Translations under genes and position numbers: made by a program
NCBI RefSeq assembly: GCF_963676685.1
Contig: NC_092348.1
Location: 13,764,001 to 13,828,000 of the forward strand
Direction: 5' to 3'
From: Mytilus edulis
Taxonomy: Eukaryota
Length of the DNA: 64,000 nt
The notes under the pieces: model-generated
The model's input: only the letters and a program-made list of their open reading frames with translations
Database searches by the model: none
Told to the model about the DNA's origin: nothing
Part shown: in pieces, positions 52,150-64,000 of the stretch
Layout of the letters: each line of letters starts with the position of its first letter
How positions within the stretch are numbered: position 1 is the first letter of the stretch

Positions 52150-54780
52150 TCATAGTAGAAATATATCAAAATTAGAACAATATCACACTGACGGGATCTT
52201 TTAAAGTACAGAGTCACGTTATAAGAACCAAAGAAATACAAAAAGTTGCATATACAAAACACACCAGCAAAAAATGAAAGACAATACAAACACATTGACG
52301 AGATGTTAAGTACCGAGCCACGTTAAACGGATATCACATAAAACAATCCAACAGTAAAAGTAATATTAATAATAGAACAAAGACAAATGAAAGAACAATA
52401 AAACACGTTGTTAAGATCATAAACAACATCAGTACGCAGAATCTATACATCAAGACCATCATGTATTATTTGTAAAGTTGATACGGAATATTTATCAACA
52501 AGGTCATGGTACCTTCCGAGTCTACTTTTTTAGTTAAAGGACGAGACGTTCTTTGACATACCCCTGGTTCATCAACTTTTTACTCAGACACTGATGACGT
52601 TTTACATAGTCTGAGTAGGAGCTGAAAGCTCTTGAATATCGAATAAGTTGGGATATGTATATCCCATGTGCAGGTGAATTTGGTACATTGCTACTAAGGT
52701 GGGGGAAATTTATAATTTCAAAATTAAAATGTTGTTTCTTTAATTTCTAGTTCTGGTGGATATATTAGTGGAATCCAATCAGAAAAGTTTGGATTGTTTA
52801 TGGAAAGAACATCAATATATCTGAAAGTGAAATAAATAATCTGGCTTCTTTGATCCTCTTGTTTTTGACAAGTGTCTGAAGGAACTCAGATTCATAAGAA
52901 AATAAGAAGAGGTCGGCAAGAAGAGGCGCACAGTTTCTTCCCATAGAAATGCCGACAATTTGTTGGAAAAGTCTACCTCCAAACTCAACAAATATGTTGT
53001 TGATAAGAAACTCCAGCATACTGACCACTTGTTCTTCTGTGTAGCATGTTTTACCGTTTTGTTTGTCACTATTAACGAAATATGCCTTATGAAATCCCAA
53101 AGTAATAAATTTATAGCGTATGCTACCATTTTTATGTTGACAGGCACTGTGGATATTTTCTTTTAGGCGATTTTTCAATTTCACATGGGGAATGGTGGTA
53201 TACAGGGTTAAAAAATCAAAAGTTTGATAGAACTAATTTCAGAAAAAGACCGAGATTTAAAATTATCTAGAAGTTCATTAGAAGTTTTACGAATCCACAT
53301 ATGGTTAATACCACTACGCGAGTAAACAGTTTCACAGTATTTCTGAAGACCCTCTTTCACTGCGGACAGAATTTTAGTCAATCTAATGGACAATTATTTA
53401 GTGGAACATGAAGATGAGCCAGCAATATACCGTTGTTTTTACGAAATTTTATGAAGCTTTGGTATCCAAATACAAACAAGGTAAGTCCTCCGATTTGGTG
53501 TTCAATGTAATGTTTATTGCAGCCATGAATGACTTATGATTTGCTAAAATCTCATCCTTGTCAGATGATATGTCTTTGTATGTGGGATTACCTGAGTGTT
53601 CCTTTATACCTAATTCTTTTACAAGACATTCGTAGTAATACGATTTACATACAAAGACAATATTATTTGAAGCTTTGTCCGCAGAAACAACAACATATTA
53701 ATTATGAAGAGATGATGGACATTTCATGGCCTCTTTGTCTCTGAAATCGGACTTTGGTCGATCGTTCACACAGTTTATCAACTTGTGAATGCGACGTTTT
53801 ATCAGAGACCTAATAGTTTTAACCCATTCTGACAAAGTGTCCAGTTCAACTTTTTCTCGCTTAGCCCTTGCTCTGGCGTAGTCCTCAATGGAATACATAA
53901 TTATTTTGAAGTTATGGTTCCAATTGATGTGTTGGGGTTCTCTAAACTTAGGACCATGAGAAATCACCTTTCGGAGATTTTTATGTTGAATTATGTTTAG
54001 ATGCCCAGTTATAAAATGACCAGAGGGGCTGTAATTATAAGGCGAGTGGGAACAGTCACATGTCGAAGTTTTTTTTTAGATATTGTTCTAAGTCAAGGTC
54101 CTGCAATACTTGTTTATAGTTAAATATTCTAGGTGCAATGGTTTTTGGTGTAACTGTAGGATACGATAGGAACAGACTGATTTTGAAAATAAATAGGAAT
54201 TTTAAATGTTACCTCCTTGTGATGTAGAACGTTGCAGATATTGATTGCATGAATTCCTCTATTGGCAAAGTCAACAGGAAGGAATTTCCTCTTTTCCTCA
54301 TATAAAGGTTCCGATCTTACTGGTTTGAAGAGACGGAAAAGAGCTACATCACAAATAATACTGACAAATTTGTATATGAAGAAAATGTATTCGTGCCTCC
54401 TTTGTCAAGTGCATAATTTTTCAAACGTTTAAGAAAATTAACTGGCAGTGAAAAGAGAATAGTTCTTATATAATGTAACCCTAGTGGATGATGAAGATGT
54501 GAAAGAATGTCATTAAAGCTCCCAGAGGGTGATCTAGATTTGGAAGACTTTTTTACATTAGGCCGATGGTAATGTTTTTGCCCATGACTACATTGTTGTC
54601 GAAAGGTAGTATTAAATAAACATTAACATCACTGCAGGCAGGACTTGACAAATTTCCTACTCCTTTAATATTATTATTACAACCATATGGCATTTCGGTC
54701 CCTAATACCCTTATCCGGAAATTTTCTCTATCTTTGCGGAAAGGAGTACTTAGTACAGGGCTATTTGTGTGGTGTATTCA
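52150..54780 (-). mobile_element. Naiad-type PLE (Cys variant), 5'-truncated and frameshifted
   Basis: GIY-YIG tail (HHTNSPVLSTPFRKDRE, PYGCNNNI) precedes the RT: HGPKFREP, ADKASNNIVFVCKSYY, TLYTTIPH, GISMGRNCAPLLADLFL, FRYIDDVL. Confidence 0.92.
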
Positions 54781-55059: not shown

Positions 55060-55712
55060 TAATAAAAGAGGGGCGAAAGATACCAGAGGGACAGTCAAAC
55101 TCATAAATCGAAAATAAAGTGACAACGTCATGTCTAAAAATGAAAAAAGAAAAACAGACAAACAATAGTACACATGACACAACATAGAAAACTAAAGAAT
55201 AAGCAACACGAACCCCACCAAAAACTAGAGGGATCTCAGGTGCTCCGTAAGGGTAAGCAGATCCTGCTCCACATGTGGTACCCATCGTGTTGCTTATGTG
55301 ATAACAAATCCGGTAAATAGTCTAATTCGGTAGGTCACATTCATGAAAGGGAAGGGGATTGTAGTTACGACGTAAGGAACATATCCGATATTATTTGTGA
55401 AACGGTTATTCCATAACGGTCAACCAACTCGTGATGGCGTCCGTAAAATTTACGAAGGGATGATTTCAATCTCACCATTTGGAACTCTTGGTTTAATAGC
55501 TTCCTTGTGAGTAGCAATCCTCTATCAAGAAAAACATGATAGGAAATGCAAAGACGGGAATATCTTATCAATTGAGAGATATATACCCCGTATGCAGGTG
55601 CTGCTGAAATGTTGCTACATTAAAATGGAAAGTTTACAATTGGAAAGCTGAAATCATCTCTTATGGCGTAAAGTTTTGTTTTCAACCGACCCACATTGTC
55701 AATTTCTAGATG
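55060..55712 (-). mobile_element. 3' fragment of another PLE family (RT thumb and 3' UTR)
   Basis: RDDFSFPIVNFPF...PAYGVYISQLIRYSR...LRKFYGRHHELVDRY, then a gagcaggatctgcttaccctt tail. A degenerate copy of the tail lies at ~30055-30225(+). Confidence 0.85.
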
Positions 55713-60537: not shown

Positions 60538-60756
60538 ATGCATATTTGTGATATATGTGGTAAAAACTTCAAAAGAAAATGGAATTTAACAAGACACAAT
60601 AAGACACATGAATCAGCATATAACCAGCCAAATCATGTTTATAAGTTGTATAAATGTGAGAAGAATAATTGTGGAGCGGAATTTACAACTAATACTGGTC
60701 TTTGGCAACACAAAAGGAGAGAACACCTGCATAAAGTTGAGAGGGGACTCAATATG
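60538..60756 (+). CDS. C2H2 zinc-finger protein, exon A (fingers 1-2)
   Basis: CDICGKNFKRKWNLTRHNKTH and CEKNNCGAEFTTNTGLWQHKRREH. Phase-0 donor gtatgt at 60757; an acceptor AG at 60535-36 suggests an upstream exon. Confidence 0.8.
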
Positions 60757-61055
60757 GTATGTTGTAATAGTTGAAATCTGGTGTGACACATAAAACACAC
60801 GAAGTTTGCAGTTTGACGCATATTATCTAATAATATATACTAGTATATCAAAGACCAAATAGCTGATACATTGTAGTAACATAAGGGATACAATTCGGAC
60901 TAATTAACTGGGGTTAATTGCATTGAGTGACTATTATCCAAAAAATGTACTCTTCAGTTTGACAAAATGTCCATTCTATATATTTTATTTTCATATTTGC
61001 AGTATTCATAGTATCTAGTGAAAGATCAATTCAAATTATGTAATTTTATTTGTAG

Positions 61056-61206: not shown

Positions 61207-61369
61207 GTGAGTGAAAATGTGTAAACTACATTAACTCTGGTCAACAGTGATGAAAAAACTAAAAAAAAATTATATATTGTTTTCCAAAACATATTATATA
61301 TAATATTATAAAAACAGAGATATATATCACACAATGATAGGTACAGAATCATGTATCATATTTTTTTAG

Positions 61370-61725
61370 GTATTCAAGAGAACAAACAGTTCGCATGCAG
61401 TGTTTGTAAGAAGGAGTTTCAATCCAAGCAATATCTCAAGGTAAATTGCAAATCTGCACACCAAAAACCTGTCTTCCAATGTGACAGTTGTGGCGAAATC
61501 TTTAAGTGGCAGTCAAGCTACAACCGACATACAGCTAAGGGTCGATGTCATGGAAAGAAGACGGATAATACAGTTAATAAAATTAAAATTGAGAATGGAA
61601 ATGGGGAATGTGTCAAAGAGACAACAACCCGACCAAATAAAAAAACAACAACAGAGGGTCACCAACAGGTCTTCAATGCAGCGAGAAATTCCCGCACCCG
61701 GAGGCGTCCTTCAGCTGGCCCCTAA
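61370..61725 (+). CDS. C2H2 zinc-finger protein, exon C; last ~50 codons derive from the antisense PLE tail
   Basis: ttttag|GIQENKQFACSVCKKEF...FQCDSCGEIFKWQSSYNRH, reading through PLE sequence to a TAA at 61723-25. Confidence 0.75.
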
Positions 61726-62104
61726 ACAAATATATATTAGTCCAGTGATAATGAACGCCATACTAATTTCCAAATTGTACACAAGAAACTAAAATTAAAA
61801 TAATACAAGACTAACAAAGGCCAGAGGCTCCTGACTTGGGACAGGCGCAAAAATGCGGCGGGGTTAAACATGTTTGTGAGATCTCAACCCTCCCCTATAC
61901 CTCTAACCAATGTAGTAAAGTAAACGCATAACAATACGCACATTAAAATTCAGTTCAAGAGAAATCCGAGTCTGATGTCAGAAGATGTAACCAAAGAAAA
62001 TAAACAAAATGACAATAATACATAAATAACAACAGACTACTAGCAGTTAACTGACATGCAAGCTCCAGACTTCAATTAAACTGACTGAAAGATTATGATT
62101 TCAT

Positions 62105-62168
62105 CATATGAACATCAGGCACAATTCTTCCCGTTAGGGGTTTAGTATCATACCATCATAACATATAT
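62105..62168 (-). promoter_or_regulatory. Type II SECIS element
   Basis: Minus strand: atatgtt-ATGA-T-GGTATGAT-act-AAA-c-CCC-taac-GGG-aaga-ATTGTGCC-TGAT-gttcatat. It has the AUGA/GA quartet, an 8-bp helix II, AAA 12 nt after AUGA and an apical mini-stem. Confidence 0.88.
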
Positions 62169-62224
62169 AAGAAGAACATAACCCGTGTCATGCCAACAAC
62201 TGTTTTTAAAAAAAAATAATGTGT

Positions 62225-64000
62225 TTAGTTCCGATGCAAAGACCTTATCAGTGACTCAATATTAACGCCAAAATATGCAATCTTTAATGACTTGATAACA
62301 GTATCGTAATTATATCCCTTCTTAATAAGTCTATTCAAAGGTTTTGTAAGTTTCTGAGGTGAATACTGACACCTTTGTGCTTTATAAAGAATATTACCAT
62401 AAAAAATTGGATGTGAAATGCCTGAACGTATTAGAAGTCTGCATGTTGAGCTATATTTACGAATGATGTCTTTATACCGATGATAAAATTTAGTAAATGT
62501 TTTGACTAGTTTGTGATATCAAAAACCCTGGTGTAATAATTTTTCAGTAATACATAAATTTCTCTCGTTAAAATCTAAAACATTGTTACATACACGAGCG
62601 AATCGTCCAAGTTGAGATATATAAACACCGTAAGATGGTGACAAGGGAACGTCACCATCTAAAAACGGATAATTAACGATAGGAAATGAAAAATCATCCC
62701 TTTTATCATAAATTTTAGTATTCAGCTTTCCATTAGTGATATAGATATCAAGATCGAGAAAAGGGCAGTGGTCATTGTTAGTATTAGCTTTATTTAAAGT
62801 AAGTTCAACAGGATAAATTTCATTAATATACATACTGAAGTCGTCATTATTGAGAGCCAAAATATCATCCAAATATCTAAAAGTATTATTAAATTTGTTT
62901 ATCAGATGTTGTTTCGATGGGTCTTTGCTTATTTTTGTCATAAATTGTAACTCATAACAATACAAAAACAGGTCCGCAATAAGTGGTGCACAGTTAGTCC
63001 CCATTGGAATTCCGATAATCTGACGATATACGGAATCCCCAAAGCGAACAAAAATGTAATCTAGTAAAAATTCAAGGGCATATATAGTATCAAAGCATGT
63101 CCAATTAACATAGTTTTTTTGTTTATTGCTACTAAAAAATGACCTAAAAGAGTTTGAACATATATATTCACATTCTGATTTTTTGAATGCCCATTTAATT
63201 AGGTGTGTGAATTTTTTCTTAATGAGAATGTGAGGCAATGTGGTATACAGGGTAGAAAAATCAAAACTTTGAACAGATTCAAAATCACCAATATAAGCAT
63301 GCAATTTATCAAGTACTTCCAACGAGTTTTTGACACTCCAAAAGTAATTTATTCCACTATTTTTGAAGGCCTTATTTGAACAATTTATTATCAGGTTTTT
63401 AATTGTACCAAGTGTGCTGGTAAGAAGAATAGACAATTTAGTAGTTGAACAATGGCTTGAAGACGAAATAAATCTATATTTGTAAGGGGTTTTGTGTAGC
63501 TTCGGAAGCCAATACATAGTTGGGACTTTCATTGTATTTGGCTCTGCTTGTAAAGCGGTGGCTAAAAGTTTATGTTTGTTACAGATTTCGTTTTCTGAAA
63601 ATGGAGTCAGTTGGAATGTTGGTGAATTGGTGATTTCCTTTTTCAGAACCTAAATGTAAAATTTACGTCAAACAATAATAATATTATTAGCAGCTTTATC
63701 TGCCGGGACAAAAACAAATTCCTTGCCTAGTTCTTTTAGTTTATGTTTGATACGAGAAATAGGTTTATTGTGGTTATTGTTTATAGTAAAATGTTCTTTA
63801 AAATGTTGAATACGTATATCAACTATCTTCATTACTGAATTAAAAAAAGAGTCCAAAGATTTTTTGTCAGCTTTTTCCCGTTTTATCCATTTCATACAGT
63901 AAGTATGGAGTGAGTCGTGGATGATATTACGACACTCATTCCAATTAATAATTGACGGGGGACGATATTTAGGTCCTTTACTGAGGAATGATTTTAACTC
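62225..64000 (-). pseudogene. PLE reverse transcriptase with putative Sec codon (TGA 63670-63668) and two likely nonsense mutations (TAG 63652-50, TGA 62521-19)
   Basis: KGPKYRPP, DKAANNIIIV-U-RKFY, YWLPKLHK, FDFSTLYT, GIPMGTNCAP, FRYLDD and YDKRDDF motifs all lie in one frame. Confidence 0.9.

What the first reader, a model, noticed from the sequence alone, without database searches (positions are those of the whole stretch)
62105..63670. Retrotransposon carrying a selenocysteine recoding system (in-frame UGA plus SECIS)
Seen: the ORF track splits the PLE RT at a TGA (63670-63668) in DKAANNIIIV*RKFY. The sister PLE in this window has TGT (Cys, 53649-53647) at the same position in DKASNNIVFVCKSYY. 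About 60 nt after the real TAA (62225) lies a type II SECIS: AUGA at 62159-56, AAA at 62143-41, UGAU at 62117-14, and helix GGUAUGAU/AUUGUGCC. Established: Naiad-clade PLEs encoding selenoproteins have been reported (Craig et al. 2021), so the class is not new; as far as I know the function of Sec in them is unresolved. Inference: RT synthesis depends on host Sec machinery and selenium supply, a possible nutrient or redox switch on retrotransposition. This copy is probably dead (TAG at 63652-50, likely CGA>TGA at 62521-19).
Basis: partly seen in the sequence, partly recalled or inferred. Interest (0 to 1): 0.9.

Follow-up and report, generated by a model that had tools for sequence, protein, structure and literature searches.

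The report
Selenocysteine-coding Naiad retrotransposon, dead copy
This is a broken copy of a very young, abundant and transcribed Penelope-like "Naiad" retrotransposon whose working relatives read four UGA stop codons as selenocysteine with the help of a SECIS hairpin behind the gene; such elements were already described in clams and spiders, so it extends a known oddity to a new host and family.

Summary
The in-frame TGA at 63670-63668 is present in 30 of 30 genomic copies. TAG 63652 and TGA 62521 are private to this copy, as is a third stop outside the window. The element is a 3.9-kb Naiad-clade PLE on the minus strand with a 1002-codon ORF. It carries four family-fixed TGA codons, each at a conserved cysteine: second Cys of the CX4CxxC finger, the Cys before GIY-YIG, first Cys of CCHH, and DKA+8.

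A type II SECIS lies 55 nt after the TAA. It scores 28.7 bits on Rfam SECIS_1 here and 32.3 bits in other copies, below the cut-off of 35. Its structure covaries across families that are only about 41-59% identical in protein.

dN/dS between two TGA-bearing sister families is 0.04-0.11 on both sides of every TGA. Relatives carry only TGA, TGT or TGC at these sites. The host has tRNA-Sec and SepSecS, and the family is transcribed.

This matches the selenoprotein Naiads of Craig et al. 2021 (clams, spiders), in a new host that is probably a mussel. The set of Sec sites differs from the published ones. The proposed selenium "switch" remains untested. The scan had already found this family elsewhere in this genome (s1-830508, s1-837620).

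The parts
61584..64000 (-). Part of the Naiad element inside the window. The whole element runs from window-equivalent 65497 to 61584 (3914 nt); its 5' 1.5 kb lies beyond the window end.
   Evidence: Ends were defined by alignment of 7 full-length and 23 5'-truncated copies. RNA read depth stops exactly at 61584.
62225..64000 (-). In-window part of the single ORF. It covers the linker with the GxKY and DKA motifs, the RT core with the YLDD motif, and the C-terminal region. The full ORF runs from ATG at window-equivalent 65233 to TAA 62227-62225 (1002 codons).
   Evidence: Translations. Homologs with an N-terminal GIY-YIG and a C-terminal RT.
63668..63670 (-). Family-fixed TGA, the predicted selenocysteine codon, eight residues after the DKA motif.
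   Evidence: 30/30 copies carry TGA. 49/49 long homologs have Cys here. Relatives carry only TGA, TGT or TGC.
63650..63652 (-). Private nonsense mutation (TAG; 29 other copies have GAG).
   Evidence: All RNA reads carry the family letter.
62519..62521 (-). Private nonsense mutation (TGA; 29 other copies have CGA, a CpG transition).
62225..62227 (-). True stop codon TAA.
   Evidence: 29/30 copies carry TAA. Homology ends here.
62105..62169 (-). Type II SECIS. It comprises helix I, the AUGA/UGAU core, a 10-bp helix II, an AAA bulge and a 3-bp apical mini-stem. This copy has two private substitutions (62169 C>T, 62126 G>A).
   Evidence: Rfam SECIS_1 gives 28.7 bits here and 32.3 bits in other copies. 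Covariation on 9 sequences. The own model R1 finds it as the only strong hit in the window.
61584..62224 (-). 3' UTR (641 nt), the most abundant and most highly transcribed part of the family.
   Evidence: It is 93% identical between sister families although dS is about 0.3.
52558..54374 (-). It is 33-39% identical, frameshifted, and has Cys (TGT 53649-53647) at DKA+8 and Cys in the CxC motif. It has no SECIS.
   Evidence: No SECIS_1 hit. The weak R1 hit at 52418-52470 lies in its coding C-terminus.

Best explanation
The window holds the 3' 2.4 kb of a 3.9-kb Naiad-clade Penelope-like retrotransposon. It has an N-terminal GIY-YIG endonuclease, a KR-rich linker, CxC, GxKY and DKA motifs, and a C-terminal reverse transcriptase. 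In working members of the family the single 1002-codon ORF is translated through four UGA codons as selenocysteine. The SECIS hairpin in the 3' UTR directs this with the host's tRNA-Sec machinery. All four Sec residues replace conserved cysteines: three in the Zn-finger-like motifs of the endonuclease and one eight residues after DKA. Shown here: the fixed TGAs, purifying selection across them, the conserved and covarying SECIS, the host machinery and transcription. Inferred: actual Sec insertion, and what Sec is for. My best guess on function is that Sec and Cys are largely interchangeable at these metal- or redox-type sites once a SECIS is present. That would explain why lineages flip between TGA and TGY, with a side effect of making protein output depend on Sec-decoding capacity. 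The window copy itself is a dead insertion. It has three private stops and two private SECIS changes, with about 0.4% private divergence.
For: 1. TGA is fixed in the family. The counts are 30/30 (DKA+8), 15/15, 14/14 and 12/13 copies at the four sites, while the three other stops of this copy are private.
2. Each TGA aligns with a conserved Cys. 49/49 long homologs have Cys at DKA+8 and Cys at the GIY-YIG sites.
3. On 30 related metagenome loci the five sites hold only TGA, TGT or TGC, never another codon.
4. dN/dS between two sister families that both carry the four TGAs is 0.04, 0, 0.10 and 0.11 in the segments before, between and after the TGAs, with dS of 0.19-0.31.
5. Within the family, variants shared by two or more copies are 19 nonsynonymous to 27 synonymous. 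Singletons are 164 to 76. Fisher p = 7e-4.
6. SECIS: the Rfam SECIS_1 hit is on the sense strand 55 nt after the stop. Homologous hairpins directly follow the stop codon in diverged TGA-bearing families.
7. Covariation: 92.7% of cells are paired against 35-49% when partners are slid, 12 of 17 pairs change on both sides, and 0 of 500 shuffles reach this. AUGA, AAA and GA are invariant.
8. The all-Cys relatives L054, L059 and L067 have no SECIS.
9. The host has 5 tRNA-Sec hits over the cut-off and a SepSecS gene.
10. RNA-seq reads cover the ORF with a sense-strand bias and carry the family letters, not this copy's private ones.
11. The position and arrangement equal the published selenoprotein Naiads.
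Against: 1. The SECIS scores below Rfam's gathering score (32.3 and 28.7 against 35 bits).
2. SECISearch3 and Seblastian could not be run.
3. The hairpin's folding energy is not unusual (z = -1.3).
4. No protein-level evidence of Sec insertion exists.
5. Two TGA-bearing relatives (L057, L064) show no SECIS in the 210-330 nt of 3' sequence that their contigs hold.
6. The structure used for the covariation count was partly derived from the same sequences, although Rfam's model gives the same pairs.
7. The copies examined are the 30 most similar of thousands, not a random sample.
Confidence: 0.9

Rival explanations
1. The TGAs are ordinary nonsense mutations in a non-autonomous lineage. Cys-type Naiads encoded elsewhere copy that lineage in trans, and the hairpin is a chance look-alike.
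For: Cys-type Naiads exist in the same window and in public data. The SECIS hit is below Rfam's cut-off.
Against: All four nonsense codons sit on conserved Cys codons and none elsewhere. The same sites are TGA in families only 41-59% identical. dN/dS is about 0.1 downstream of every TGA. The SECIS covaries. The all-Cys relatives lack it.
Confidence: 0.03
2. The UGAs are read through, but not as Sec. A near-cognate tRNA inserts Cys, Trp or Arg, or the Sec machinery inserts Cys. The protein is then effectively a Cys-type Naiad made at low yield.
For: Sec and Cys appear interchangeable in evolution at these sites. No protein data exist.
Against: A conserved, covarying SECIS after the stop codon in TGA-bearing lineages has no role under plain readthrough. 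The host has tRNA-Sec and SepSecS.
Confidence: 0.05
3. The UGAs act as real or regulated stops. They split the product into small endonuclease peptides, and the RT is made by internal initiation.
For: Gene callers do split the ORF at these codons.
Against: The segments between the UGAs are 30 and 10 codons long and lie inside the GIY-YIG core, so they cannot be separate products. Most segments have no start codon. Selection is uniform along the whole frame.
Confidence: 0.02

Closest known systems
[quoted passage not shown] 2021, PMC8557442)
   Same: Same clade architecture. UGA at the Cys before GIY-YIG, at the first Cys of CCHH and at DKA+8. SECIS just after the real stop. Bivalve-type host. 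High copy number.
   Different: This family has a fourth UGA at the second Cys of the CX4CxxC finger, a site reported only for a spider family. It lacks the odd RT6(D) UGA of Naiad_Scon. The SECIS is 55 nt after the stop and looks type II (the paper reports type I, 1-21 bp after the stop). The host has 14 large chromosomes and is probably a mussel, not a clam. No direct sequence comparison was possible because the supplements are not held.
Naiad_Sdum and Naiad_Smim (Stegodyphus spiders; same paper)
   Same: Three or four UGAs at conserved Cys, including the CX2-5CxxC finger, plus a SECIS.
   Different: The paper infers an independent origin. Spider Naiads lack the IFD. The UGA is at the first Cys, or the first and second Cys, of that finger and not in CCHH.
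Cys-type Naiads, such as the extended Penelope-2_CGi of oysters and the abundant Mytilus galloprovincialis Naiad counted by Craig et al.
   Same: Same domain order and the same CxC, GxKF/Y and DKA motifs. Same 5' truncation, partial tandem pLTRs and absence of hammerhead ribozymes.
   Different: They have TGT or TGC at all these sites and no SECIS. The sister relic in this window and L054, L059 and L067 are of this kind.
Selenoprotein P, the classical multi-Sec protein (up to 132 UGAs in molluscs, Baclaocos et al. 2019, as cited in PMC8557442)
   Same: Several UGAs in one ORF are decoded with 3' UTR SECIS elements. This shows that bivalves can decode serial UGAs.
   Different: It is a host gene for selenium transport, its Sec residues lie in a Sec-rich tail, and it usually has two SECIS elements. 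Here there is one SECIS and the Sec residues sit at structural or catalytic Cys sites of a transposon enzyme.

Membership tests
Naiad clade of Penelope-like elements | GIY-YIG endonuclease N-terminal to the RT, with a CCHH motif inside the GIY-YIG core and an upstream CX2-5CxxC motif | tested here: met
   Translation of the upstream 1.5 kb shows C-x4-*-x2-C, then *-x6-IIY-x3-*-x4-C-x3-YVGET, where * is TGA. Full-length Cys-type homologs hit Pfam GIY-YIG at residues about 86-169 and RVT_1 weakly at 653-809.
Naiad clade of Penelope-like elements | Diagnostic linker: KR-rich block, CxC motif, GxKF/Y motif, and DKA instead of DKG | tested here: met
   The KR-rich stretch, SCNCS, KGPKYR and PADKAANN are all present in the frame.
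Naiad clade of Penelope-like elements | RT core with a catalytic YxDD motif | tested here: met
   RYLDDILAL and flanking RT motifs are present in the ORF. The pieces themselves give no Pfam or PDB sequence hit. 5530 homologs score E<=1e-30.
Naiad clade of Penelope-like elements | Insertion anatomy: frequent 5' truncation, partial tandem copies (pLTR), a short tail, and a body of 3.4-4.4 kb | tested here: met
   Truncation points vary among the 30 copies. 5 of 7 full-length copies are preceded by a partial tandem copy and share a 48-nt spacer. The body is 3914 nt.
Naiad clade of Penelope-like elements | No canonical hammerhead ribozyme | tested here: met
   No hammerhead match at E<=1 in three full-length loci with pLTRs, and none at E<=10 in the window.
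Naiad clade of Penelope-like elements | Phylogenetic placement within Naiads against reference PLE clades | not tested
   Reference Naiad, Chlamys and Neptune sequences are not held. Only unnamed homologs were used in the tree.
Eukaryotic selenoprotein gene (UGA recoding by a 3' UTR SECIS) | In-frame UGA aligned with Cys in homologs, with the coding frame conserved downstream | tested here: met
   (only TGA, TGT or TGC at five sites). dN/dS is 0.04-0.11 on both sides of the UGAs.
Eukaryotic selenoprotein gene (UGA recoding by a 3' UTR SECIS) | SECIS element in the 3' UTR: AUGA...AAR...GA core on a stem-loop | tested here: inconclusive
   All core motifs and helices are present. Rfam SECIS_1 gives E 0.002-0.007 but 28.7-32.3 bits, below the gathering score of 35. 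Covariation across families is strong. SECISearch3 grading was not available.
Eukaryotic selenoprotein gene (UGA recoding by a 3' UTR SECIS) | Host possesses the Sec machinery | tested here: met
   Five tRNA-Sec matches at 77-79.6 bits against a cut-off of 47. A six-exon SepSecS match on contig C4.
Eukaryotic selenoprotein gene (UGA recoding by a 3' UTR SECIS) | Selenocysteine actually incorporated into the protein | not testable with these tools
   This needs 75Se labelling, mass spectrometry or ribosome profiling.

The most novel reading that the evidence does not exclude
Four serial UGAs make synthesis of the transposon's enzyme depend multiplicatively on the cell's Sec-decoding capacity and selenium status. 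Retrotransposition of this very abundant, still transcribed family would then be gated by a nutrient or redox state, or confined to tissues rich in Sec machinery. A weaker version is largely supported here. After one SECIS gain, a whole clade toggles freely between Cys and Sec at five or more metal-type cysteines (0-5 UGAs per element, including a CxC site not yet reported). It also scatters thousands of ready-made SECIS elements through the genome.
Probability: 0.2. Interest if true: 0.8.

Novelty: new member of a known kind. Interest (0 to 1): 0.5.

Why it matters
Selenoprotein-encoding transposons have been reported only once, as four families in two clams and two spiders, and the role of Sec in them is open. 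This family adds a new host lineage and is exceptionally tractable. It has thousands of copies about 99% alike, some of them still open-framed, and it is transcribed in public RNA-seq. A near sister family gives clean selection estimates. The relatives found here show a graded Sec/Cys mosaic at five cysteines inside one clade. That mosaic turns "why Sec?" into a comparative question and points to Sec-to-Cys reversions as well as gains. Practically, gene callers split these ORFs at UGA, so such elements are under-annotated in bivalve genomes. The 3' ends dispersed by 5' truncation are a large pool of SECIS elements that could seed new host selenoproteins.

Tried and rejected
- The first metagenome scan with P0002 found nothing. 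Alignment A1 was too diverse to search with. Alignment A2 worked.
The tallies therefore rest on the 30 best-matching copies plus 7 extended ones, not on a random or genome-wide sample.
- I used per-site tallies on natural copies instead.
- I do not name which copies are open-framed.
- Pfam on the ORF pieces gave nothing useful. The PDB sequence search gave nothing.
- A genome-wide Rfam SECIS_1 search scored only 130 of 47,381 candidates and listed one hit, so it gives no ranking.
- The paper's supplements are not held, so there is no direct comparison with Naiad_Scon or Naiad_Mmer.
- The protein search gave no source names, so host identity was not confirmed by it.
- I rejected the weak R1 hit behind the sister element (52418-52470). 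It has no AAA and lies inside that element's coding C-terminus.
- L057 and L064 carry TGA at DKA+8, but no SECIS was found in the short 3' sequence available.
- L042, L043 and L053 have only weak or interrupted SECIS candidates.
- The extra TGA in L044 and L062 aligns with Q, L or D in relatives, not Cys, so I left it uninterpreted.
- Folding energy alone does not single out the hairpin.

Full report
**1. The observation**

On the minus strand, one frame runs from the window end (64000) to TAA 62227-62225. It is interrupted by TGA 63670-63668 (...PADKAANNIIIV*RKFY), TAG 63652-63650 and TGA 62521-62519.

It is the only Rfam SECIS_1 match in the whole window. It lies on the sense strand and starts 55 nt after the stop. 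The score is 28.7 bits against a gathering score of 35. E is 0.0024 in the 901-nt search and 0.17 for 64 kb times 4227 families. The sister element has TGT at 53649-53647 in ADKASNNIVFVCKSYY.

**2. The element**

The genome holds thousands of near-identical copies. The first look gave 4230 candidates for the 3' 1951 nt and 1859 for the 5' 1498 nt, and the 40 scored in each search are 98-100% identical.

Seven extended loci define a 3914-nt body, at window-equivalent 65497 to 61584. Only 64000-61584 lies in the window.

The copies show the classical PLE anatomy:
- 5' truncation points vary.
- Five of seven full-length copies are preceded by a partial tandem copy (pLTR), separated by a shared 48-nt tail.
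- There is no hammerhead ribozyme.

The upstream 1.5 kb encodes, in the same frame, a CX4CxxC finger, a GIY-YIG core with CCHH, a KR-rich linker, CxC, GxKY and then DKA. This is the Naiad architecture of Craig et al. 2021. Full-length homologs hit Pfam GIY-YIG near the N-terminus and RVT_1 further on.

The ORF runs from ATG at 65233 to TAA at 62227, which is 1002 codons.

**3. Which stops belong to the family**

I tallied natural copies site by site and built no consensus.

| Codon (window-equivalent) | Site | Copies with TGA |
|---|---|---|
| 63670 | DKA+8 | 30/30 |
| 64945 | first Cys of CCHH | 15/15 |
| 64978 | Cys before GIY | 14/14 |
| 65071 | second Cys of CX4CxxC | 12/13 |

Three stops occur only in the window copy: TAA 65191 (others CAA), TAG 63652 (others GAG) and TGA 62521 (others CGA).

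The window copy also has two private changes in the SECIS, 62169 C>T and 62126 G>A. These lower the Rfam score from the family's 32.3 bits to 28.7. It is a dead copy with 0.44% private differences. The family median is 0.34%. Four of nine near-full-length copies have no stop or frameshift other than the four TGAs.

**4. The TGAs sit on conserved cysteines**

- An exhaustive HMMER search with the 424-residue piece between two TGAs found 2790 relatives.
- All 49 relatives of at least 800 residues have Cys at DKA+8, and they have Cys at the GIY-YIG sites.
- Seven cluster representatives, 37-64% identical, end exactly at DKA+7.
- Others end just before the first Cys of CxC.
- Many RT pieces begin one to three residues after DKA+8.

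This is what a gene caller produces when a stop sits on that codon.

**5. Diverged relatives with DNA**

A metagenome scan returned 35 loci. At DKA+8, 23 have TGA and 9 have TGT or TGC. None has TAA or TAG, and the frame continues with conserved sequence.

Across five cysteine sites only TGA, TGT and TGC occur. The sites are the finger's second Cys, the Cys before GIY, the first Cys of CCHH, the first Cys of CxC, and DKA+8. Elements carry from 0 to 5 TGAs in a mosaic. The CxC site is not among those listed by Craig et al..

In a quick maximum-likelihood tree of the RT part, all TGA-bearing loci form one clade (SH-aLRT 98), apart from the all-Cys ones. The closest relative of the window family (L056) has TGA at CxC but TGT at DKA+8, and their outgroup (L042) has both TGAs. 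This points to Sec-to-Cys reversions as well as gains. The tree is quick, rooted at the midpoint only, and the hosts of the contigs are unknown.

**6. Selection**

I compared a same-family contig with a sister family about 93% identical in protein. Both carry all four TGAs. The segments before, between and after the TGAs gave the following:

| Segment | Codons | dN/dS |
|---|---|---|
| ATG to first TGA | 54 | 0.04 |
| First to second TGA | 30 | 0 |
| Third to fourth TGA | 424 | 0.10 |
| After the last TGA | 480 | 0.11 |

dS is 0.19-0.31.

Within the family, variants shared by two or more copies are 19 nonsynonymous to 27 synonymous. Private ones are 164 (including 19 stops) to 76, with Fisher p = 7e-4. 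The whole frame has therefore been under protein-level constraint in lineages that carry the TGAs. This excludes ordinary nonsense mutations.

**7. The SECIS**

Rfam finds homologous hairpins on the sense strand, at or just after the real stop. This holds in the same family, in the 93% sister, in L056 and in the family that is about 42% identical.

An alignment of nine of them keeps ATGA, AAA, GGA and GAT invariant while the helices change.
- On the structure that Rfam's model also gives, 92.7% of cells pair, against 35-49% when partners are slid.
- 12 of 17 pairs show changes on both sides.
- No shuffle of 500 reaches the observed values.
- The 3-bp apical stem after the AAA bulge covaries (CG to GC), so this is a type II form.

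A covariance model built from these sequences found further elements that were not in the training set: L051 at 62.7 bits, L055 at 36.9, and a weak, interrupted one in L043. In the window it gives one strong hit only.

The all-Cys relatives L054, L059 and L067 have no SECIS. Caveats are that the Rfam scores stay under the gathering score, SECISearch3 was not available, and two TGA-bearing contigs (L057, L064) show none in their short 3' sequence.

**8. Host and expression**

The genome has five tRNA-Sec matches at 77-79.6 bits and a multi-exon SepSecS gene.

Three raw RNA-seq runs labelled with the same species cover the element up to exactly 61584. Depth is highest on the 3' UTR, which is expected from many truncated copies inside other transcripts. 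Over 63300-63850 there is a bias of up to tenfold for first mates on the + strand. In the usual stranded libraries that means sense RNA.

The reads carry the family letters at 62521, 63652, 62126 and 62169, so they come from other copies. No variant is listed at the TGA, although 52 rows were not shown.

Matches fall on contigs C1 to C14 only. One holder run is labelled a mollusc metagenome. I did not confirm the species.

**9. Comparison with what is known**

Craig et al. 2021 (PMC8557442) describe four selenoprotein Naiads, from two clams and two spiders, with three or four UGAs:
- In all four, UGA sits at the Cys before GIY-YIG and at the Cys eight residues after DKA.
- In clams, UGA also sits at the first CCHH Cys.
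- In spiders, UGA also sits in the CX2-5CxxC finger.
- SECIS elements lie 1-21 bp after the stop.

The present family shares all of this. It differs in its combination of sites (clam-type plus the finger's second Cys), in the SECIS position and apparent type, and in host. It is a new member of a known kind.

The Sec/Cys mosaic suggests instead that the two residues are close to interchangeable once a SECIS exists.
Noticed in passing
L041/L042, L044, L045, L049, L052, L053, L055, L056, L058, L060, L062, L063 (metagenome contigs): Related Naiads carry TGA at the first Cys of the CxC motif, a Sec position not listed by Craig et al. 2021. Some elements have five in-frame TGAs. L048 has only the DKA+8 TGA.
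   Followed up: partly
L032, L034-L037, 48 nt just upstream of the full-length copy: A shared 48-nt spacer lies between the upstream partial tandem copy and the full copy. It contains a perfect 7-bp hairpin (ggaggca...tgcctcc). It is absent from the window copy and is probably the PLE 'tail'.
   Followed up: no
G000 C7:74.8-75.4 Mb and C1:49.15 Mb; C10:14.40-14.44 Mb: Five tRNA-Sec genes score over the Rfam cut-off, four of them within 560 kb. This is unusually many for an animal. In addition, at least 40 near-threshold tRNA-Sec-like hits form a tandem array with 895-bp spacing.
   Followed up: no
window 60538-60774 and 61351-61725 (+): C2H2 zinc-finger ORFs lie next to the insertion. The second runs across the element's 3' end at 61584, so the Naiad may have landed in or beside a zinc-finger gene. 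No RNA reads fall on 61300-61572.
   Followed up: partly
window 55482-55691 (-): A short RT C-terminal fragment is 54% identical to this family. It is a third Naiad-like remnant in the window.
   Followed up: no
L035 and L037 (tandem arrangements): In tandem insertions the upstream partial copy places a second SECIS upstream of the full ORF (two SECIS_1 hits per locus).
   Followed up: no
window 61584-62120: The 3' UTR is 93% identical between sister families although synonymous divergence is about 0.3. It is also the most deeply covered part in RNA on both strands. It is constrained beyond the SECIS, perhaps for recognition by the RT.
   Followed up: partly
P0240, P0277 (public protein clusters): Two predicted relatives show W at DKA+8. 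This fits a TGA translated under an alternative code by the annotating pipeline, or a TGG variant.
   Followed up: no
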